DNA of 59,621 bases, filler included, from Sluysia triapertura (Eukaryota): the NCBI GenBank assembly GCA_046118255.1. It is 5 parts of 5 records of this genome, joined end to end, with 100 filler letters (N's around TTAATTAATTAA, not from the genome) between each part and the next. Parts side by side here need not be neighbours in the genome. Positions count along the whole stretch, not along the records: positions 23,836 to 34,942 come from JBJNIA010188787.1; 4 more parts are not named here. One strand, written 5' to 3'. Each line of letters opens with the position of its first letter. Position 1 is the first letter of the stretch. Made by a program: the position numbers and the translations under genes. Shown piece after piece: positions 22,801 to 34,942 of the stretch. The notes under the pieces were generated by a model. The model searched no databases. It saw only the letters and a program-made list of their open reading frames with translations, and had not been told where the DNA came from.

Positions 22801-23962
22801 AAATAAGATTTTTACTAAACAACTAACGTCACCATCACATAATGGCCGCCATAGTTATCATCAGAAAAGAAATCTTTATCGAAATTAGACCTTCAAAAAA
22901 TTTTAACTATAAAAATAAATTATAAGTAATTAAATACTCTATATATAGTATTTAATGCAATATCAATTTCCTTAAAAGGAAATTGTATTTTTTGCCGAAA
23001 TTATTTTCTTTGTTTTTTCTGTTTTTTAATGATAATATAAGAGCCACAATAACTAATTTTTCTTTGCAAACAATATAAAATTTAATTGTACTAATATAAA
23101 ACGTGGCAGTGTATATAATTTAAAATTTGTTCAATGATGATTGCATAGATTGGACTTAATTTAAACCAATTTTCATTATTTTCATTAATATTTTGAATAT
23201 TATTAATATTTGATTTTTCTTAAATAAACTGATCAATATATTGTTCATAAATATTCAAGCATACAATCACAATAAAAATTTAGTAAAATTAATTTCATTA
23301 AATTTAAATGTTCATTTTTTATATGCATCGTATCAAATTATAGCAGAAATTCTGGTAACCATGACAACATTTTGATTTTTATTTTAATCATCATTTTATA
23401 ATTGCAATTTAAAATCAAAATGATATTAATTAATAGAAATATTAATTACTCTTTTTGGTACATAAATTTTATAAATAACAATTTTCATTTAATATATAAA
23501 ATTAATTTAGTCATTTTGATTTTATAAGTAATATCAACATTTATTAAATAGAATAATATTAATTAATAATTAAAATACATAATTTTCTACATAATTAAGA
23601 TAAAATCGAATTTAGTAGAAGAATAAGTAATAAGAGTAGTATCAGTAGACGTAGTAGCAGTAGTTATTGTTACTCTTTTATCACATAATATACCTGTCCA
23701 ATTTTTGCATACATATACACTTAGCTTGCACCATTNNNNNNNNNNNNNNNNNNNNNNNNNNNNNNNNNNNNNNNNNNNNTTAATTAATTAANNNNNNNNN
23801 NNNNNNNNNNNNNNNNNNNNNNNNNNNNNNNNNNNTGAACTCAAAATGTTTGTAAAATGGTTCGTTTGAGAATAAGAAGCTTAAAACATTTTTCATTAGA
23901 AAATTGGGTGTGCTAGTGTTTTTCTTAAACTTAAATCTATACACTGCAAATTATCTGAGAAG

Positions 23963-24730
23963 TCGGTTCGCCTAATACATACGCTTTACACCACAATTGG
24001 AGACGTACTATTAGGTTTTCTTAAATCTGTTAACTAACTGTTTACTTCGAATTAACTTTTAATTACTCGGCACTACAACCCTTTACTAGGTGTTGTTCAA
24101 ATAAAGCTTTATATTTTACAAAGTATTCAACTCGTATTAAGGTGTTGCTTTTAAAAACTCTTCGATGAATTTATATATTACGCAACCCGTATTAAGGTGT
24201 TGCTTGAGAAAAATGAATTTTAGATTAATAAAGAAAAATTACTCAGACGACGTAAAATATATTACAATGGCTTATATAATACAAACACTTAAAAAGTATG
24301 ACTTACAACTAAAAAATAACTTATAAAACTATAATAGAAATACCGATTTTAAGGCTTACTCAACCTCGGTTGGTACGTAGTGAAATTTAAGGTAAGTTAC
24401 ATAACCCGTGTAAGGTGTTGTATAATGAAGAAATATTTTAAGTACAATTTTATACTTCCTATATAAAGTGAAGTTTAATACCTATATTAAAATTAATGGA
24501 CTGATTAATAGCTGGAACTTGAAAACTTCAGATATAAAACTTCTTGTACTTTTGCTGTGGCTTACTCTTGTGTTTTTCCTTGTGTCTCTCTTGTGTTGTG
24601 TTTTCTCATATTTATATAAAAATTACTTTTCAATATGACTTCTGATGAAAATAATTTATTTATTTATGTTTCCTTGTCTAAATTTCTAAAATTAGATTTT
24701 TAAAAATAAAATTACCTTTATTTAAATTAA
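23963..24730 (-). repeat. Copy A of the hairpin/micro-exon family (putative spliced non-coding RNA or non-autonomous element)
   Basis: CAACACC-N7/8-(G)GTTG units at 24076-24095, 24127-24147, 24182-24202 and 24402-24420; terminal conserved hairpin at 23963-24015; GT-AG spacers. Confidence 0.65.
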
Positions 24731-25769
24731 GATAAATTTTAAACAAATAAAATTAAATTTAGACAAATAAAATTAAATTTTAAAACAAAATAAAAATTTG
24801 ATTTTTATTTAATTTTCTATTTTTTGTTATTTTAATTTTTTTACAATTTTTATAATTTCTATAATTTTATAAGTTTTAATTTCTTATTTTTTTTATTTTT
24901 GGTTTTATTTGTAATATATAATAATTTTTCTAAAACAATTTTTAAAACACAAGTACAAATAAATTACATTTTTTACATACCTTACACATAGAACATTTTA
25001 TTGATGAAATAACATTTGTGTCTTGATTATTAGGTTTTGTTTTTTCGACATATACCTTTTCAGATACACACATACATAAATATATACATAAATATATAAG
25101 TTCGGACGGACAAAAGAATAGAAAAAAGAATAGATAAAAGAAATAATAATGTTAACAATAATATAATTATTATATATTTTAAAATAATTATATTGTTGAT
25201 GTGGTGTTATTATAAAAGTTATTATATGACAATCATGGTAATCATATTATGACAATAATCAATAATTATTATATATTTTAATACGATTAGATTTATAATA
25301 ATAACTATAGTTCATGACAATTATTTACAATGATTATGTCTGTTTTTTGAATGAGTGAAATAGTTTGTTTAATGTTCTATGTATGTATGAGATGGTTTTA
25401 TGTAATGAAGCGGTGAAATTTTGATATGATTTCTCTACAGTGAGTTCGAAAGTGATACAGAGATACAAAAACGAATACTTAAAAATTTTCAAAAAATTTG
25501 ATTGTATCGCACAATACCGAAGGGAAGATCCATGATTATAGTAAATTTTATTATTATTATTTTTGAATAATTTTTTAAATAATTTTTTAAATAATTTCTT
25601 GAATAATTTTCTGAATAATTTTTTGAATAAGTTAAGTTAACGTTAAATTGATTTCATTTGATTTTATTTGACTTTATTTGATTTTAATTGATTTTAATTT
25701 GAGCAAATTATTAAGCGCTTACTTATTATTTTTTTATTTAGCTCTCATTAAATTGACTTTAATTGAATT

Positions 25770-26200
25770 TAGGGAGACTCCTTGCCCAAATTTTTTTCTA
25801 GTTTTGCGGCTATCAAGTTAAATAATACTAATATTATTACTGATTTCAATTTCTTCAGATTTTGGTATTTTTTATTTTGTTGCTTGTTGCGTAGCCTCTG
25901 GTTTCTTTGGATTAATTGTTGTGGTCGTAATATTGTCATAAGTTTTATGGTTAACTTCGAAATTTAGTTGTTTTTCATTTAGTTTACTTATATTATTGTT
26001 CTAGAAGAGAATTATAATAACAGGTTGTATTTGAATTTTTCATTATTTATTATTGACTTCTTGTTATTATTTTAAATTAAGAACGTAATTTTTAATAAAC
26101 ATCATTATCAAAATAAGAAAATTTGTGATATTATTTAAGTAACGTAAATTAATACTGTATTATTGTTGTTATTGATTTAAGTCTCAACAAATTAATTAAA
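25770..26200 (-). repeat. Dispersed repeat homologous (inverted) to about 36330-36720 and 40843-41233
   Basis: Shared aatttc.aagttaac.ataaaa, caaagaaaccagagg and aaaataccaa.atct.aagaaattgaaatca.taataatatt. Confidence 0.75.
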
Positions 26201-27789
26201 TATTAAATTTATTTTCCATAAAAAATGCGTCATATTAACCGTACATTACGCATCGATTTCAATTACTTATCTGAATTGGTATCTTAATAAGCATTAATTT
26301 GTTATGTATTTTGATTATGCTCGAGCATTACAGGATACAAAATTTAACTTTACATTAGAGAAAATTAATTGAAATAACTAATTTTTAGTTATCAGCATCG
26401 ACTTGCTTAGCTACATCTCAATATCAATAATACTAATGAGTTCGGATATTATTTTCTCATATGCAGATATTTATCATTAAATTATTAAACCAAACAATTA
26501 TTAATTAAAATAATAAATTAATGTGGTTTTGTATTTTCAAGAGAAAAACATTATAAAGGGTTTTCTTTTCATATCTTTCTTTTTTTCAAATTTAAACATT
26601 TTACCAATAAAGTCAAGATATTTTACTTTATTCTTTTAATAATACTTGTTTTATCATTATTCTACAAATTATAGTACTAATATGTGCTCCACCTTATTTT
26701 CTCGTATATAATTGTTCTAAAGATACTATACTGACACTAAAAAATTTTACTGGTCTTTGACACTAAAATGAAATGTAAACATTTGTTAATAAACTCAAAA
26801 TTTCGACATAATTATTAATCAGTAGGAAAGTTATATCGACAGAATTATTGTTAATTCAGAAAGATAATGTTTAAATATGAGTTAATGGTAGTTTAAAGCT
26901 ACTTTTAAAACATTTATAAATTTCTAAATTTGTTAAGCATAGCTTAATAAATTAAAATTTCAGTATTGTTTTTCTTTTATTTATTATTCGTTTATTGTGA
27001 TGGATATATTTAGCTAATTTTCGAGAACATATTTTTGAAGTCTCATTGTTTCTGTCGAAAATTGTAAATTGTTAAAGATAAATTAATAAAAAATTAACAT
27101 TAGTAACTATTAAAGAATTGTTGATTAGTTAATTAAAATAATTAAAGACTTACAAATAGTTAAAGAATTGAGCTGTGGATTATAATCCAAAATTATACAA
27201 TGATTTTTAGAAGTATAAGAGTGTATACTGAACGATTATAATTCATACATTTAAAATAAATAATATCAATAAAAGCACAGGAGTTAAATATTTTCCAAAG
27301 ACTCAATAGTCAAATGTATTTGAAATCAATCACTCAGGCGTAAACTTGCCCGTGTTCTAATTAATAGCACATTAAAAAATCTATGGAGGTTCCTTCCATT
27401 AGGATTTAAGCCACCTACTATAAGCGAACCTAACGAATGAAATATGCAAATTTCATTTCACGTAGGTAGGAAAAAGAACTCGCATTAATATTATTACACT
27501 AATATTATTATCAAGTTTTAATGCTGTTATCATTATATTATTATTACTATTATTATATTATCATTATTTCGTTCGCTTTTTTAACCTGAGGCATTGACAA
27601 CCATAAGACTGTTATAAATGATGCATCTGTATATCAACAGTGGAAAGTTTTAGAGTAAATGCAATAAAAAGTCGAAGTGAAAAGGTTATTTTGTGTAAAG
27701 GTTATAGTCATATTTACTATACATTATAAGGCGGATTAAAGTTTAAATTATTTTGTTAAATACGTTTTATTTGTGAGAAACCCAGGCAT

Positions 27790-27875
27790 TATTCTTAATC
27801 TTATTATTAGACTTCATAAAATGGACTGACCGGGGATAGACCCGGGACCTCTCGCTGCGCAGTTCGATGAACTGA
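27790..27875 (-). mobile_element. tRNA-derived SINE head (or tRNA pseudogene)
   Basis: AGAGGTCCCGGGTCTATCCCCGGTCAGTCCA resembles a tRNA variable loop, T-arm and acceptor with a degenerate B box; no intact D-arm; second fragment at 15.04 kb. Confidence 0.6.
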
Positions 27876-28189
27876 AAACTTTTATTTTACAACAAAAACA
27901 AGTACGTATATAATCAAATAATATTTTACAATAAATATAAATAAATGGATCATATTTATATCAAAAAAAGTAGTTAATGTAATAAGGCTGATACTGATTG
28001 TCCATTTAAGAAATTAATATTCGTGATACTTCTGCCACTTGTGCTGCTGGTGATAATAATTGTTGTTAATAATTGTTGTTGAACCATGGGACCACAAGCA
28101 TACCATTGATAAGTCAGAAAAAACAAAGAAAGATATTAAATCACAATCACACCAATGATAAATCACAGACATACAATTAAGTGGGTGAA

Positions 28190-28630
28190 ATAAATAAATG
28201 AGAATATAAGAAAATAAATAAGGGACAATATAAATAAATAAAAATAAAAAACCATTGAATGCAAAATGAAAAGAAGAAGGAAATGAAATTGTGAAAGAGA
28301 ATATCAGTTGTCGTATGATATATTGATTAAAGATTGAAGATTAAAATCCCCCAAGATAGAGGATAAATAAACTCATTAAAGTACCAAGATTAAGTCACAT
28401 ATGACAACAATATTATCTTTGTAGGATATTGGAGGGAATGGTCCTTGTAGATATTAAAGGAGGATTCAGTGGAAAGTTTGATACACTGGCGTGCCAAACC
28501 AGTTATATCGGCTCTGCGGAGGCCTAGTTTTTTCAGAAGGATATCATTTTGAGAATCCCAAGAACCAAGTACTCCAACGAGAAACGTGTCAGGGGAAACC
28601 CACTGAGCTTCAGCCCCGTCTAACAATTTT
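28190..28630 (-). mobile_element. 3' fragment of the same RLE non-LTR family as 13.6-14.9 kb
   Basis: ADITGLARQCIKLSTESSFNIYKDHSLQYP here vs ADITGLACQCIKLSLESSFNIYKDHSLQYP at about 14600-14690. Confidence 0.85.
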
Positions 28631-28735
28631 TAGATTATTATACTCAATTACATTATGACATCTTAGACCTGTATCCCAACATTATTGCAAGTGTCTTTAT
28701 GAAGAACTTAACCTACTTACAAAATGTTTGATGAG

Positions 28736-29460
28736 TCGGTTCGCCTAATATAAACGGTTGGAGACGTGCTATTAGGGTTTTTATGAATTATACTTAACTT
28801 AAAAATTAACTTACACCTTACTCTGCATATGACAAAAATAATTAATCACTTGAGTCTTTTAAATTTTATTACAACCCTTTATAAGGTGTTGTTGATCAAA
28901 TTATAAGTTTATACTTCCGCAAACAGTATAAGGTGTTGCTTTAAAAATATTATCAGAATTTAGAGATTACTCAACCATTCTTAAGGTGTTGCTTCAAAAT
29001 AATTTTTAAAAAGCTTTAAGTTACACAACCATTTTGTTAAAAATCAAAGATCATTTAATTAGTAAAGAGTAACTAAGTAAATCTATTACGATTTATTATT
29101 TCAAACTAAACAAAATTTTACAAAAAATTTTATAAAAGAAAAATATTATAGTATAAATAGTGAATTTGACAATTCAACCTTAATTGATTGTTTTTATATT
29201 TTAATTAATAAGGTGTTAATACAAAAAAATTGAATGATTTTTAGTATATTTTTGTATTCCTATATTTTAGTATATTTTTGTGAATACTTTAAACCTATAC
29301 ATATAAAAATTACTTTGAAGTCATGGATCTTCTTTGGTGAAAAAATCTTTCTTCGAAAAATTGCTGCTTAAAAATTACTCTAAAATTTTATCAATATTTG
29401 TTGTGTTGATTTCTAAAACATTAATGCTATTTAAAATAGCTTACCTGTCGCCATATTGAA
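28736..29460 (-). repeat. Copy B of the hairpin/micro-exon family
   Basis: Units at 28872-28891, 28919-28938, 28971-28991 and a partial unit at 29026; terminal hairpin 28736-28776; 32-33-nt GT-AG spacers. Confidence 0.65.
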
Positions 29461-29770
29461 TTTTATTAAAATAGTTAAAATAAAGAAAATATTTAAAAAT
29501 AAAATATTTATTTAAATTTCTTGAAACCCTAATTTTAACTTTATTTTTAATTTTAAAACTTTTAATATTAAATTATATATTAAATTATTTTATTAATTTT
29601 CTTTTTTTGCTATTTTATTAATTTATTTTATTTCGTTAATATAACAATAAAACAATTATTTTATAAAATTATAAAATTTACAGAATTCACATGTTATATA
29701 ACTAATAGACAAAAATATATAATAAAATTTACAACTTGGCATTATTATTGTTATTATTATGTGAATAAAA

Positions 29771-29818
<48 letters not shown>

Positions 29819-31515
29819 TAATTAATAACAACAGTAGTCTTATCTAAATATAAATAATTAAAATAAAAATATTATATACAACCCGACATTTCCATTCTCA
29901 TCTAAATATTTTCGTTTTTAGAAAATGAGTACTTATTAATTATATGTGATACATCCATACGATGTACACACATAAATAGATGAAAAATAGTTAAATTGAC
30001 AAAAAAATATACGTTTTTCACATCTTTATTACGGTTACGTTACTGTTCTGGTAAAATTCTACCACGATGGTTGAGTTTCTGTTTTTGGACAAATTTAGAT
30101 CACAAACATATTTATGTTGCATTGCAACTAATTCGAACAATATTGATACTTGATTGGCGATTCCTCGATGCAATCGATAATATCAAACAGAGTATTGGTT
30201 TTCATCATTTAAATGGACTGTACAATGTTTTTATTGTTACGAGAGGATTTTTGATTTGAAATATTTTTTGCAAGTTTATTGTTATAAGTTCTGTATTTGC
30301 TAGGAGACATAAAATCTAGGTAAACTCATTAATTGTTCTTCTTTCTAGTTTTGGCTAGAGATAATTTCTCTATAAACGTAAAAAGATGATTTAGAATTAA
30401 ATATTCTAAATATAATTTTGTCAATATTTTTATATGCTTATATTATAGTTCAGTTTTGTACTATTAAATTTTAGCATTTTTAATAATAAACTTTAAAAAG
30501 TTTGTTTTCTAGTTATTTTAATAGAAAAAATTTGTGATTTGTTGTAAAGTATAAAGAATTTAAATTTGATAGTGAATAATCACAAATTGTTAAGGAATAA
30601 GAGTAAACTGAATTTGTAAGTAAAGTCAAAAAGATATTCATTTTTAAGAATTATTATTAAAAAGACCAAGAATGTTTAGGGAAGTAAAATAAAGTAACAA
30701 GAGAAATCAACACAGTTGTTAACAAACGATTTCAATTAAGAAATATTAAAATGTTCAACAATCGAAAAACTCAAGCAAGAGTCAGGTTCAAAATAAAGTT
30801 ACTCGCTTAAGTAGAGAAATTAATTTAGGTAGTAAACATTTATAATTAAGAGGTAATTTGAGTTAGTGTTAAGTACTTGAATACATAAATAAGAGTTTGA
30901 CAAGTACAAAGGTATAAGCGATATAATTTTCCAGAAGGTTTCGTAAATAGATTCACAGAATACATATAGATCCTAATACGTAAATCTTATACATGTACAT
31001 CCTACAGATACGTTACCTTAAATATAAATAGTAGATCGTAGACGTACCCGGAGTAAAATAACACATTCGCACGTCAAATCTCTTAAAGCATTTAATCGAA
31101 AAAATCAGTGCAACTACTATTATTGTTGTTATAGATTAAGTACAAAAATTTCCTTTGTAGATTTATATAATTAAATGAATTTGATGCAAAGAATCATGTT
31201 TATCTAAAATAATTTGAAATTCGTTTAAAATTTTAAATATTCGTTTATCTTTAAATACAAAATTATTAGTTTCCTAATAATGACACACTTGTTATAATTA
31301 TTTTTAATAAGTTCAATAATTTTATCCGTAAATTTTAAATATTAAGCTGTAACTAATTTTATTCTATTTAAAAATCTTTGTTTGTTTATTTCAGTGAATT
31401 ATTTTGTTTATATAATGGATGTTAAACTAATAGAAGATTTCTATTTTCTAATGAATTCATTATTTTAATTCTTTTTTAAATTATTTGTAAAACTTACACG
31501 ATCTATTAATCACAA

Positions 31516-32743
31516 ATGGCATTGGGATGTGCCCCTTTTAAACCTGAATCTGAAGAACAAAAAAATCGAAAAGAATCAAATAAAAGAATTGAGAAGCACA
31601 TTGAAAAGGAAAAAAGATCATTTAAATCCACTCATCGTTTATTGTTGTTAGGGGCTGGAGAGTCAGGCAAATCTACTATTGTAAAACAAATGAGGATATT
31701 ACATATTAATGGTTTTTCTGCCGAGTAATTTTTTTAATTTATATTTAAAACTAAAACAGAGAAAAAATTCAAAAAACTTTAGACATTCGTAAAAATCTTA
31801 GAGATGCTATCTTAGTAAGTTTTACTCGTCTTATTTACGTAAAATAGACCATAACAAGTGCTATGTCCACTTTGAATCCTCCAGTTAAATTAGATTGTCC
31901 CGATAATGAACCCAAAATGGAATATATGCAACATGTGGCTTCTAGACCTGATTTCAATTATCCTAAAGTAACTTGTTATAAATTATGTTATTATTTAAAG
32001 GAATTCTATGAATATTGTCGGGATTTGTGGAAAGATAAAAGTGTTTTAGAGGCTTATGAAAGATCTAATGAATATCAATTAATAGATTGTGCAAAATAGT
32101 AATTTATAATTGCTAATTTTATTTTTTTAAGTTTTCTTGATCAAGCTATAAAACTTGGTGAACCTGAATACGTTCCAACAGAACAAGTAAGTGGTGATTT
32201 ACATACAATTCATTAAAGAAACTTAAATTATTTGATAATTGTCAATTAATTCTATGTACAAATTAAAAACAATAGTACTTAATGTATTTAGTATGTATAA
32301 ATTTATAATCGTTTTATAGTTTAAAATTTTTTGCAACTAAGGAAAAGAATTTATAATGCTTAAATAGTTTATGAATGATATGGGTATTAACTTAATTTAA
32401 ATATTTCGATATTTTTAAATTTTGAGTATACTTGCATTTTATCGAGATATTTCAAGAAATGTTAAATGTATAATGCAATGTAATATTAGGATATTCTCCG
32501 GTGTCGTGTTTTAACTTCTGGTATATTCGAGACCAAGTTTAATGTGGACAAAGTGAATTTTCATATGTTTGATGTTGGTGGACAGCGTGATGAAAGGAGA
32601 AAATGGATTCAGTGCTTCAATGATGTAACTGCCATTATTTTTGTGACTGCTTGCTCTTCGTATAACATGGTGCTGAGAGAGGATTCTAGTCAAAATCGTC
32701 TAAAAGAATCACTTGAATTGTTACGCAGTATATGGAATAATAG
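31516..32743 (+). CDS. GNAS: G protein alpha-s subunit, exons 1-6 (31516-31724, 31760-31814, 31848-31967, 32001-32098, 32132-32186, 32490-32743); 3' exons not found in the window
   Basis: [81 protein letters not shown]. Introns of 35, 33, 33, 33 and 303 nt keep the frame. Confidence 0.96.
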
Positions 32744-34299
32744 GTATATACTTATCAAAAATTCTAAATTTATGAAAATTTGACATACCTAATTCGATTA
32801 TATTACAATTAATTTCGTTAGAATATTAAAATATAAATTAATATCTAATTATAGGTGTATATTTAACCTACTTCGGTACTAAAATTGCATGATACAAGCT
32901 TCTTTTAAAACAAAGCACCAAAAGTGCATCATCTATTAAACGTTTTTAATTATTTGTTGAATATTCTTACTAGGAGGGAATATTTTTATACATTTTGTTT
33001 TTTTTACATATTTGTATTGTGATACATCGAAATTAAAACTTGTATCAGATTTGTTGATATTAATTTAATATCTAAAATATGAGTTTGATATATTTTAAAT
33101 CAAGAAATATGTGCAATTTATATCCTAGATTATTATTATTTCATATTATTTGCTTCATAATTTATACTTCTTAATACTCAAAACTTTTAGCTCAGGATGT
33201 GTGTATATATGGTCCAGAATGAAAATGATCGGCTTTGTATTGCTATTTATTAATATTTACATTTGAAATTTAAATGACAAGTATGTCTTTATATAAATAA
33301 TTTTATAGTTTCTAATATCTAACTGAAGTTTATTAACAATTTGTTAGTTTTATAATAATCGGCTTTCTAATCGCATTAATACGTTTTGAATATTTGTATT
33401 ATTATGAAAATTAGAATTAAAAAAACGTTTAGAAACCCGTCCTCTAATAAAATGTAGACAATTTTATAGTGAATGATATAAATCATGCTTAAACATTACC
33501 ACCGTTTTCTAAATTTCAAATAACGTGAAGCATATTTAATTAGATATCACAACACTAACTTTCTATATTGTAGCAGCCGTATTACAATTTAAATTAAATA
33601 TTTTTAACAACAGTACATAACAATGATAAAGAGACTTCCATAACATTTTCGATAATGTTGAGGTCAGATTGTGTTCTGTTTAACATAAAGCAGCACAATT
33701 TTATTGGTGTAAGAGACGATTATCTTACTAAAAAATTGTATTGGTGCCAATAAATGGTGGACATTTAGGAAAATAATATTTTTATGTTAATTACCATTTA
33801 ATTTTCCGTCAAATAATTTTCTGAGTCAATGAAATTTCGCCATGTACTATCATTGCTCCTCTTGATTTCGATTCCACATGTTTTCATAGTTCTTCAAATA
33901 GTTTGACAAACAGGTGAATAGCTTTGCGTCAATCTTAGAAGATGCGACTTTATTCTAGAACGTACTACGTATTTTCCACTAACTTCTTTAAACCACGCCC
34001 TTTTAAAGAATATTTTAAAATATAAAAAAATAGATGTACATGGTTCATTTCATTTTAAAACAATTATATTAAAATGACACTTAATATTCAACGATAATAT
34101 TCAAGCGATCAATAATAAAATTAAATTTATGCGTTTTATAAAATCAAGTAATAAGAAAGGTTGGTTAATTTCAGTTTCAGTTACTTTCTAATCGATTTTA
34201 CAATTTACTAATTTATTTTGACTAAAAATTACAACAGATTTTCGATGGTAGATATATTTCATTTGTACAAATTATATATCCGTTTGCGGATTATCCGTA

Positions 34300-34942
34300 G
34301 ATAATATTTAGAACAGAAATAAAGAATATTCCTGTTGACTACTACAATCAAAAAGGAGCATGGATAGACAGAAGGATCTTTGAACATTGGTTAAAAATAA
34401 ATGGGTTCCAGAAATTGGAGTTCTTTTAAACAGTAAAGGACTGGTGCCTCACCAACGCTAACGTCATCAAAGAATTTATTGAAATATTTTTTTGTAAAAT
34501 TTTTACCCATTGAATATGTCAACTATCGTCAAAGAAATCAAGAATAGGACAAAGCACCGTAAACCTACCTTAATAAATTCGCAAACCAGTCTTTCAGTGT
34601 TCACGATGTATTAGTAAAACATGGAGTTTCCGCGAGGTTACCACAAAAGGATTGTGGTACCACAGAAAGAAGTAATGTTATTAGATAATGATCCTTGTCA
34701 TCCAAATGAATGCATACTGAAGACAGACGACGGCTTTATAGCTGCAAAATTTTTACCATCTAATGTAACGCCTTTAATTCAACCTATAGATCAAGGAATT
34801 ATCTCTTTAATGAAACGCCATTATCGCAATGATATTCTTAGAAGCTTTGTGACGAGAATGACGAATTAATGAATTTATGGAAAAAATGACAATGTTGGAT
34901 GCAATATATGGAGCTGTTAAATCTTGGAACAAAATTAAGCCA
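34300..34942 (+). mobile_element. pogo/Tigger (DDE_1) transposase remnant
   Basis: PVDYYNQKGAWIDRRIFEHW; LLDNDPCHP; FLPSNVTPLIQPIDQGII..MKRHYR. Confidence 0.85.

What the first reader, a model, noticed from the sequence alone, without database searches (positions are those of the whole stretch)
23963..24730. Array of 20-21-nt bulged-A hairpins that look like micro-exons separated by tiny introns (copy A)
Seen: on the minus strand the unit CAACACC-N7/8-(G)GTTG recurs every 50-55 nt with unrelated AT-rich spacers, a repeat-spacer layout. Unit 24202-24182 reads AAG|CAACACCTTAATACGGGTTGC|GTAA. Its neighbouring spacers are GT...AG segments of 40 nt (24242-24203) and 34 nt (24181-24148), close to the 33-35-nt introns of G-alpha-s in this window. 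Most units fold as CAAC/GUUG, a bulged A, CC(U)/(A)GG and a variable loop. No reading frame is open across all units. Inference: a spliced non-coding RNA that assembles a tandem string of protein-binding hairpins (sponge or scaffold, with hairpin number tunable by exon skipping), or a degenerate micro-exon gene family. Alternative: clustered DNA-binding sites, since AGGTGTT resembles a T-box half-site. Only some units keep both splice signals.
Basis: partly seen in the sequence, partly recalled or inferred. Interest (0 to 1): 0.85.

Follow-up and report, generated by a model that had tools for sequence, protein, structure and literature searches.

The report
Duplicated cluster of T-box-like sites
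Two old paralogous copies of a short non-coding module in a flatworm genome each carry three to five copies of an invariant motif that matches a proven T-box transcription-factor site, so this is most likely a gene-control element, not a string of spliced micro-exon hairpins.

Summary
The repeated motif is real and far from chance. AACACCT occurs 8 times on the minus strand, only in two arrays (24076-24420 and 28872-29218), and never on the plus strand. The two arrays are ancient paralogues. Six short islands are 85% identical, and the rest of the alignment is at 41%, which I take to be near background for this AT-rich DNA. The left half of the unit is invariant in 7 of 7 units. On the plus strand it reads AGGTGTTG(CT), the sequence of a T-box site in the mouse Dll1 enhancer that Tbx6 and T bind in gel shifts. 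The right arm decays without compensation, only 3 of 7 units fold better than shuffles, and covariation is zero, so the hairpin is not the conserved object. Four spacers do look like this genome's 33-35-nt introns. However, the blocks show no length-specific GTAA-to-AG peak, whereas the neighbouring G-alpha-s gene shows a sharp one. Unit 4 keeps the motif without an AG acceptor just upstream. No reading frame or third-position variation supports coding. No RNA data exist, so splicing is untested. Best reading (about 0.5): a homotypic cluster of T-box-type DNA-binding sites in a duplicated regulatory module. Spliced micro-exon RNA: about 0.12.

The parts
24401..24420 (-). Unit A0: CAACACCTTA..GGGTTAT, followed by GTAAC
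   Evidence: weak fold of -3.2 kcal/mol
24361..24372 (-). Unit A1: short palindrome CAACCGAGGTTG followed by AGTAAG. It lacks the AACACCT core.
24182..24202 (-). It has AAG upstream and GTAAT downstream. The plus strand reads TAAGGTGTTGCTT.
24128..24147 (-). Unit A3: the left half is identical to A2; the right arm is GAGTTG, so the stem is broken. There is no donor at the unit end.
24076..24095 (-). Unit A4: it folds well but has no AG acceptor just upstream. 23 of 27 positions are identical to B4.
23956..24019 (-). Conserved block A: CCTAATAGTACGTCTCCAA, then a 12-nt insert relative to copy B, then TATTAGGCGAACCGACT. It lies about 55 nt from unit 4.
   Evidence: its fold does not differ from shuffles
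24203..24242 (-). Intron-like spacer upstream of A2 (GTAATT...CTCAAG, 40 nt)
24148..24181 (-). Intron-like spacer between A2 and A3 (GTAATA...TAAAAG, 34 nt). Its first 15 nt are a conserved island.
28971..28991 (-). Unit B2: paralogue of A2, 21 nt, flanked by AAG and GTAAT
28919..28938 (-). Unit B3: paralogue of A3; the right arm has decayed to TGTTTG
28872..28891 (-). Unit B4: paralogue of A4
29175..29218 (-). Degenerate B0 (TAACACCTTA at 29218-29209) and B1 (CAATTAAGGTTG at 29186-29175)
29026..29030 (-). Lone right half Bx: GGTTG followed by TGTAAC. It borders the 33-nt intron-like spacer upstream of B2.
28939..29024 (-). Span holding unit B2 (listed above) and the two intron-like spacers that flank it: 29024-28992 (33 nt) and 28970-28939 (32 nt)
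28729..28780 (-). Conserved block B, paralogue of block A

Best explanation
The two arrays are paralogous copies of a conserved non-coding regulatory module of about 0.5 kb. Each is a homotypic cluster of binding sites for a sequence-specific DNA-binding protein, and a T-box factor is the leading candidate. The functional object is the invariant duplex sequence TAAGGTGTTGC (plus strand). It is repeated three to five times per copy, three of them at about five helical turns (47-55 bp). Beside it lie other conserved islands: GTAAT.T.TAAATTC, and the block CCTAATAG..TATTAGGCGAACCGACT. These would bind partner factors or form a core promoter. The weak inverted repeat (GGTTG) that makes the unit look like a bulged hairpin is a less constrained flanking element, not an RNA stem. 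Shown here: the motif statistics, the island-like conservation after an old duplication, the lack of hairpin conservation, and the identity to a validated T-box site. Inferred: that a protein binds the motif, that it is a T-box protein, and which gene is controlled. G-alpha-s starts 2.3 kb from copy B on the plus strand and is one candidate target.
For: (1) AGGTGTTG occurs 7 times on the plus strand, all inside the arrays, against 0.1 expected from base composition. An eighth site, AGGTGTTA, also fits AGGTGTBR. (2) AGGTGTTG is binding site 1 of the mouse Dll1-msd enhancer, which Tbx6 and T shift in EMSA. The oligo reads AGGTGTTGCT, and that 10-mer is present unchanged in units A2, A3, B2 and B3. 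That enhancer and Mesp2-P/E carry four T-box sites within 100-300 bp, a clustered layout like the one seen here (PMC7473639). (3) The closest G-alpha-s relatives are neodermatan flatworms, and a neodermatan (Hymenolepis microstoma) expresses a tbx2-like factor (PMC6225667). (4) CAACACCT is invariant in 7 of 7 units, while the partner arm varies and breaks pairing without compensation. This fits recognition of a sequence, not of a helix. (5) Between copies A and B, six islands (138 columns) are 85% identical and the remaining 589 columns are 41% identical. The stretches between islands do not align better than shuffles. This suggests purifying selection on short motifs after an old duplication. 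(6) Unit 4 keeps the motif in both copies without splice signals. (7) No Rfam family, tRNA or Pfam domain overlaps the blocks.
Against: No binding, chromatin or expression data exist for this organism. A match of a conserved 10-mer to some known factor motif is not rare when all factor families are considered. The conserved unit, about 30 nt including AAG and GTAA flanks, is longer than a single T-box half-site. The inverted partner CAACCC is not a valid T half-site. GTAA and AG are enriched on the minus strand of both blocks, and four spacers look like good tiny introns whose GTAA and AAG ends are kept in both paralogues; this model does not predict either fact. The controlled gene is unknown. 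A truncated LINE tail on the minus strand lies at lower coordinates than block B, about 100 nt away.
Confidence: 0.5

Rival explanations
1. Spliced minus-strand RNA. A cassette of a 21-nt micro-exon plus a 32-34-nt tiny intron was duplicated in tandem. Splicing joins the units into a non-coding RNA, or a degenerate micro-exon gene, that carries repeated CAACACCUUA motifs or hairpins.
For: Units A2 and B2 are exactly 21 nt. They are flanked by a T-rich tract plus AAG upstream and GTAA[TC] downstream. The adjoining spacers are 40 and 34 nt in copy A and 33 and 32 nt in copy B. These are close to the four G-alpha-s introns of 33-35 nt, which have GTAA[GTC]T donors. The signals are kept in both paralogues, and the islands cover the putative 3' and 5' splice sites. 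The period of 53-55 nt equals the exon plus a minimal intron. GTAA is enriched on the minus strand and depleted on the plus strand of both blocks. Micro-exon genes are known in parasitic flatworms (PMC7653826).
Against: GTAA-to-AG distances in the blocks are flat from 16 to 75 nt, while the G-alpha-s gene shows a sharp peak at 31-35 nt. Units 0 and 4 have no AG acceptor just upstream, and unit 3 has no donor at its end. Any threading places the invariant motif of unit 4 inside an intron. Intron threadings are not conserved between the two copies outside unit 2. No frame is open through all units: frame 1 stops at the end of B2, frame 2 in unit 4, and frame 3 in A2, A3 and B2. All would-be third codon positions of the core are invariant, which indicates constraint on nucleotides and not on a protein. 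The hairpin is unstable in 4 of 7 units, with no covariation. No start codon is shared by the two copies.
Confidence: 0.12
2. Both blocks are copies of a repeated or mobile element that carries internal tandem repeats, for example LINE 5' monomers or the body of a non-autonomous element. The conserved motif would be the element's own promoter or protein-binding site.
For: The neighbourhood is rich in transposon remains. A LINE ORF2 C-terminal tail lies at 28438-28620 on the minus strand, about 100 nt downstream of block B on that strand. A pogo-type DDE_1 fragment lies at 34618-34866. Internal tandem repeats of about 50 bp are common in transposons (general knowledge).
Against: Homology between the copies is confined to short islands in otherwise unalignable sequence, not the contiguous similarity expected of two element copies. 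The two copies sit 4.8 kb apart in the same orientation, which fits a local duplication. No reverse transcriptase, integrase or transposase domain was found in any ORF scanned between them. No terminal repeats were seen. Metagenome scans found no related arrays.
Confidence: 0.15
3. An unspliced RNA-level element. The array would lie in a UTR or long non-coding RNA and act as tandem binding sites for an RNA-binding protein, either as a single-stranded CAACACCUUA motif or as hairpins, in the manner of the multiple iron-responsive elements in the transferrin-receptor 3' UTR.
For: All units have the same orientation. Three units form a stable bulged hairpin. An invariant linear motif would also suit a single-strand RNA-binding protein.
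Against: No flanking coding gene was identified on either strand. There is no Rfam match, no covariation and no RNA data. The shared orientation is explained by origin through tandem duplication.
Confidence: 0.08

Closest known systems
Clustered T-box binding elements of the mouse Dll1-msd and Mesp2-P/E enhancers (PMC7473639)
   Same: The octamer is identical: AGGTGTTG is Dll1 binding site 1. With its two flanking bases (AGGTGTTGCT) it matches four of the units. Both have several sites within 100-300 bp, and Mesp2 site B has a palindrome-like configuration with mismatches.
   Different: These sites are near-identical tandem copies with about 53-bp phasing and long conserved flanks, about 30 nt in all. 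They lie in a flatworm, not a vertebrate. No binding or target gene is known. The inverted partner CAACCC is not a T half-site.
Micro-exon genes (MEGs) of schistosomes and tapeworms (PMC7653826)
   Same: The host lineage is the same (parasitic flatworms). Unit 2 is a 21-nt unit divisible by three and flanked by GT..AG spacers.
   Different: There is no run of four or more micro-exons, no open frame, no conserved start or signal peptide, and no transcript. The constraint acts on nucleotides and not on codons.
Tandem protein-binding RNA hairpins (MS2/PP7 operator arrays; IRE clusters) - from general knowledge
   Same: Units A2, A4 and B4 have a short stem with a bulged A and a variable loop.
   Different: Four of seven units do not fold. 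One arm is invariant while the other drifts. There are no compensatory changes.
Su(Hw) site array of the gypsy insulator - from general knowledge
   Same: Both have several copies of one DNA motif separated by AT-rich spacers over about 350 bp.
   Different: The motif is different. These arrays are not shown to be in a transposon, and no insulator activity has been tested.

Membership tests
T-box binding element cluster (T-box-dependent enhancer) | Core half-site that fits AGGTGTBR, or a site shown to be bound | tested here: met
   There are eight AGGTGT[CGT][AG] sites on the plus strand, and seven of them are AGGTGTTG. AGGTGTTG is bound by Tbx6 and T in EMSA (PMC7473639).
T-box binding element cluster (T-box-dependent enhancer) | Several sites clustered within a few hundred bp | tested here: met
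   Three sites lie within about 115 bp and four within about 335 bp in each copy.
T-box binding element cluster (T-box-dependent enhancer) | Occupancy by a T-box protein of this organism, and enhancer activity on a linked gene | not testable with these tools
   There are no protein, chromatin or RNA data. Only relatives are known to have T-box genes (PMC6225667).
Flatworm micro-exon gene (MEG) | Exons under 70 nt and divisible by three | tested here: inconclusive
   Unit 2 is 21 nt in both copies. The best threadings of unit 3 give 28 nt (A) and 24 nt (B).
Flatworm micro-exon gene (MEG) | At least 7 exons with a run of at least 4 consecutive micro-exons (PMC7653826) | tested here: not met
   Only unit 2 has both signals. 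Unit 3 has an acceptor only, and units 0 and 4 lack an acceptor just upstream.
Flatworm micro-exon gene (MEG) | A continuous reading frame through the micro-exons | tested here: not met
   Frame 2 has stops in A4 and B4, frame 3 in A2, A3 and B2, and frame 1 at the end of B2. The core never varies at any codon position.
Tiny spliceosomal introns of this genome (33-35 nt in G-alpha-s) | GTAA[GTC]T donor, a T-rich 3' part ending in NAG, and a length of 33-35 nt | tested here: inconclusive
   Four spacers fit in form, at 32, 33, 34 and 40 nt. Donor position 6 is T in only two of them.
Tiny spliceosomal introns of this genome (33-35 nt in G-alpha-s) | A length-specific excess of GTAA..AG pairs, as seen in a real gene | tested here: not met
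   The histogram is flat in the blocks (A and B summed: 10, 10, 6, 10, 11, 4, 12 per 5-nt bin from 16-20 to 46-50). G-alpha-s gives 6 in bin 31-35 and 0-3 in every other bin.
Tiny spliceosomal introns of this genome (33-35 nt in G-alpha-s) | Junctions used in RNA | not testable with these tools
Structured protein-binding RNA hairpin | A stable fold in every unit | tested here: not met
   Three of seven units fold better than shuffles.
Structured protein-binding RNA hairpin | Compensatory or wobble changes that keep the stem | tested here: not met
   There are no changes on both sides and no one-sided changes that keep pairing. Every departure from the consensus breaks a pair.
Flatworm spliced-leader RNA gene | A leader that ends in ATG directly before the GT donor (PMC7653826) | tested here: not met
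   The units end in GGTTGC or GGTTGA before GTAA. There is no Rfam match.
Transposable element copies | Contiguous homology, terminal repeats, or an element-encoded protein | tested here: not met
   Homology is confined to islands. No transposon domain was found between the copies. The LINE tail at 28438-28620 is a separate fragment.
Transposable element copies | Many dispersed copies in the genome | not testable with these tools
   Only this 11-kb piece is available, and the genome is not in any searchable collection.

The most novel reading that the evidence does not exclude
A minus-strand non-coding transcript in which a cassette of a 21-nt exon and a 32-34-nt intron was duplicated in tandem. 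Splicing would concatenate near-identical CAACACCUUA-bearing micro-exons into a repeat RNA that acts as a protein sponge or scaffold, and exon skipping would set the number of repeats. This would be a non-coding counterpart of flatworm micro-exon genes.
Probability: 0.1. Interest if true: 0.8.

Novelty: new member of a known kind. Interest (0 to 1): 0.33.

Why it matters
Cis-regulatory DNA of parasitic flatworms is almost unmapped. A module that survived an ancient duplication as short conserved islands, built on an invariant site identical to a validated T-box element, gives a concrete candidate enhancer. It also gives a testable factor-site pair, for example by EMSA or DAP-seq with the species' own T-box domains. 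The case also shows a trap. In AT-rich genomes with 33-nt introns, GT..AG spacers of the right size arise easily. A histogram of donor-to-acceptor distances separates real intron-rich genes from look-alikes. If RNA data later showed the predicted junctions, the finding would become much more interesting.

Tried and rejected
A translated ORF overlapping them had gone to Pfam earlier.
3. Rfam at E up to 5 gave nothing relevant, and ARAGORN found no tRNA.
4. More copies and orthologues. Exact look-up of a G-alpha-s ORF was not on record. The best relatives sit on short contigs or have no DNA held. The S. mansoni G-alpha-s locus (L001) has no motif. A metagenome scan with the block pattern gave 0 hits. 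A scan with the unit pattern gave 17 loci with one match each. These fall into two groups of homologous sequences plus three singletons, with no arrays, which is consistent with chance.
5. LTR-retrotransposon reading, with the two copies as LTRs. No RT, IN or gag domain was found in 29 ORFs scanned in and between the two blocks, and homology is not contiguous.
6. Spliced-leader gene reading. Rejected because flatworm leaders end in ATG.
7. Conserved block as a structured RNA. Its folds do not differ from shuffles.
8. Pol III A-box and B-box resemblance on the plus strand (GGTTCG in the block, TGCNAGTGT upstream). This was noted by eye only and is too weak to use.
9. Resemblance of GTTGCGTAAT and GTTATGTAAC to C/EBP and PAR bZIP consensus sites. 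This is recalled from memory, was not tested, and holds in only some units.

Full report
**What is there**

The usable piece is 23836-34942 and has 24.7% G+C. On the minus strand the unit CAACACC-N7/8-GGTTG occurs at 24420 (A0), 24202 (A2), 24147 (A3) and 24095 (A4). A shorter palindrome, CAACCGAGGTTG (A1), lies at 24372-24361. A second array lies 4.8 kb away in the same orientation: 28991 (B2), 28938 (B3) and 28891 (B4). It also has degenerate copies at 29218 (B0) and 29186 (B1), and a lone right half at 29030.

- The pattern gives 5 matches against 0.15-0.19 expected from dinucleotide shuffles.
- AACACCT occurs 8 times on the minus strand, all in the arrays, and never on the plus strand.
- The array is narrower than the stated range.
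- The period of about 53 nt holds only for units 2-3-4. Spacings are 55 and 52 nt in copy A and 53 and 47 nt in copy B.

**The two arrays are old paralogues**

Units align in register. About 55-90 nt beyond unit 4, both copies carry a conserved block, CCTAATAG.ACGTCTCCAA ... TATTAGGCGAACCGACT, at 24019-23956 and 28780-28729. Conservation is island-like.

- Six islands (138 columns) are 85% identical, while the other 589 columns are 41% identical, which I take to be near background for this AT-rich DNA.
- The stretches between islands do not align better than shuffles, with z from 0.1 to 1.8.

This suggests a long-past local duplication followed by selection on short motifs. It does not look like two decaying copies of a repeat.

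**Context**

- A G-alpha-s gene runs on the plus strand from 31516. It has four tiny introns of 35, 33, 33 and 33 nt, with GTAA[GTC]T donors.
- Its best protein matches are neodermatan flatworms: Protopolystoma 91% and Schistosoma mansoni 88%. The host is therefore probably a parasitic flatworm.
- About 100 nt beyond block B, at 28438-28620 on the minus strand, lies the C-terminal tail of a LINE ORF2.
- A pogo-type DDE_1 fragment lies at 34618-34866.
- No other ORF scanned in or between the blocks hits Pfam convincingly.
- Rfam and ARAGORN find nothing relevant.

**Is the hairpin the functional object?**

The evidence says no. Only A2, A4 and B4 fold as proposed, at -7.6 to -8.2 kcal/mol with z from -2.2 to -3.0. 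A0, A3, B2 and B3 fold at -1.3 to -3.2 kcal/mol, no better than shuffles. On the unit alignment the left arm CAACACCT is invariant in 7 of 7 units. The right arm varies, every departure breaks a pair, and there is not one compensatory or wobble change. Some of these breaks, in A0 and B3, come from a 1-nt shift in the ungapped alignment. An arm that stays invariant where its partner has decayed is being read as a sequence, not as half of a helix.

**Are the spacers introns?**

Four spacers look the part: GTAA[TC]N, a T-rich 3' part and AAG. They are 40 and 34 nt in copy A and 33 and 32 nt in copy B, and both paralogues keep these signals. GTAA and AG are also enriched on the minus strand of both blocks:

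- 12 of 23 GTAA..AG(31-36) donors lie in 15% of the piece (p = 4e-5).
- Local shuffles give p = 0.005 for copy A and p = 0.054 for copy B.
- These counts are not independent, because five of the donors belong to the repeated motif.

Several results speak against introns:

- In G-alpha-s the GTAA-to-AG distances peak sharply at 31-35 nt (6, against 0-3 in every other 5-nt bin). In the blocks the histogram is flat from 16 to 75 nt. The excess therefore reflects composition, not a length-constrained intron signature.
- Units 0 and 4 have no AG acceptor just upstream, and unit 3 has no donor at its end.
- Any threading places the invariant core of unit 4 inside an intron.
- Threadings differ between the two copies outside unit 2.

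**Is it coding?**

No frame is open through all units, and all would-be third codon positions of the core are invariant. The constraint therefore acts on nucleotides, not on a protein.

The units are not spliced-leader exons either. Flatworm leaders end in ATG (PMC7653826), and these end in GGTTGC or GGTTGA.

The MEG criteria of that paper are not met. They require at least 7 exons, a run of at least 4 micro-exons divisible by three, and an open frame.

**What the invariant sequence matches**

On the plus strand every full unit reads TAAGGTGTTG, and four of them read TAAGGTGTTGCTT.

- AGGTGTTG occurs 7 times, all in the arrays, against 0.1 expected.
- AGGTGTTG is T-box binding site 1 of the mouse Dll1-msd enhancer, which Tbx6 and T shift in EMSA. 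The oligo carries AGGTGTTGCT, the same 10 bases.
- That enhancer and Mesp2-P/E carry four T-box sites within 100-300 bp (PMC7473639).
- A neodermatan, Hymenolepis microstoma, expresses a tbx2-like factor (PMC6225667).

This is a resemblance to a tested site in another phylum. It is not a demonstration of binding here.

**Verdict**

The hairpin and micro-exon interpretation fails every test that could be run, although splicing itself is untested because no RNA data exist.

| Reading | Confidence |
|---|---|
| Element-derived repeat | 0.15 |
| Spliced micro-exon RNA | 0.12 |
| Unspliced RNA motif array | 0.08 |

The remainder is unassigned. The strand-specific GTAA/AG excess and the intron-like spacers flanking unit 2 remain unexplained by the favoured model, and they keep the novel reading alive at about one in ten.

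**Limits**

- Only two copies could be compared.
- The genome is not in any searchable collection.

Noticed in passing
window 28438-28620 (-): A 5'-truncated LINE. The ORF 28393-28629 matches the extreme C-terminal 50-60 residues of RVT_1-containing proteins of about 1080 aa (P0130, P0134). The same tail is repeated in tandem inside some database proteins (P0121, P0123).
   Followed up: yes
window 34618-34866 (+): A fragment of a pogo/Tigger-type transposase (Pfam DDE_1, E = 3.7e-13).
   Followed up: partly
window 31516-32780 (+): A G-alpha-s gene with four tiny introns (35, 33, 33 and 33 nt; GTAA[GTC]T donors) and at least two long ones. The best matches are Protopolystoma xenopodis (91%) and Schistosoma mansoni (88%), so the host is probably a neodermatan flatworm.
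   Followed up: partly
window 27830-27872 (-): GGTCCCGGGTCTATCCCCGG resembles a tRNA T-arm or B box, which suggests a possible SINE or tRNA remnant. ARAGORN calls no tRNA here.
   Followed up: no
window 24640-24940 and 29440-29840: Both arrays are followed at higher coordinates by an extremely AT-rich, low-complexity tract (7-12% G+C). The second tract includes an (AAT)n run at 29764-29828. These tracts may belong to the duplicated unit.
   Followed up: no
window 24632-24607 and 29319-29293 (-): A 16-nt identical island, AAAGTAATTTTTATAT, is shared by both copies. It lies at different distances from unit 0 (about 206 nt in copy A, about 95 nt in copy B), which implies an indel of about 110 nt in one copy.
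   Followed up: partly
window 28818-28813 (-): One extra AGGTGT lies in the opposite orientation (within TAAGGTGTAAG) between unit B4 and block B. It is not conserved in copy A.
   Followed up: no
   Followed up: no
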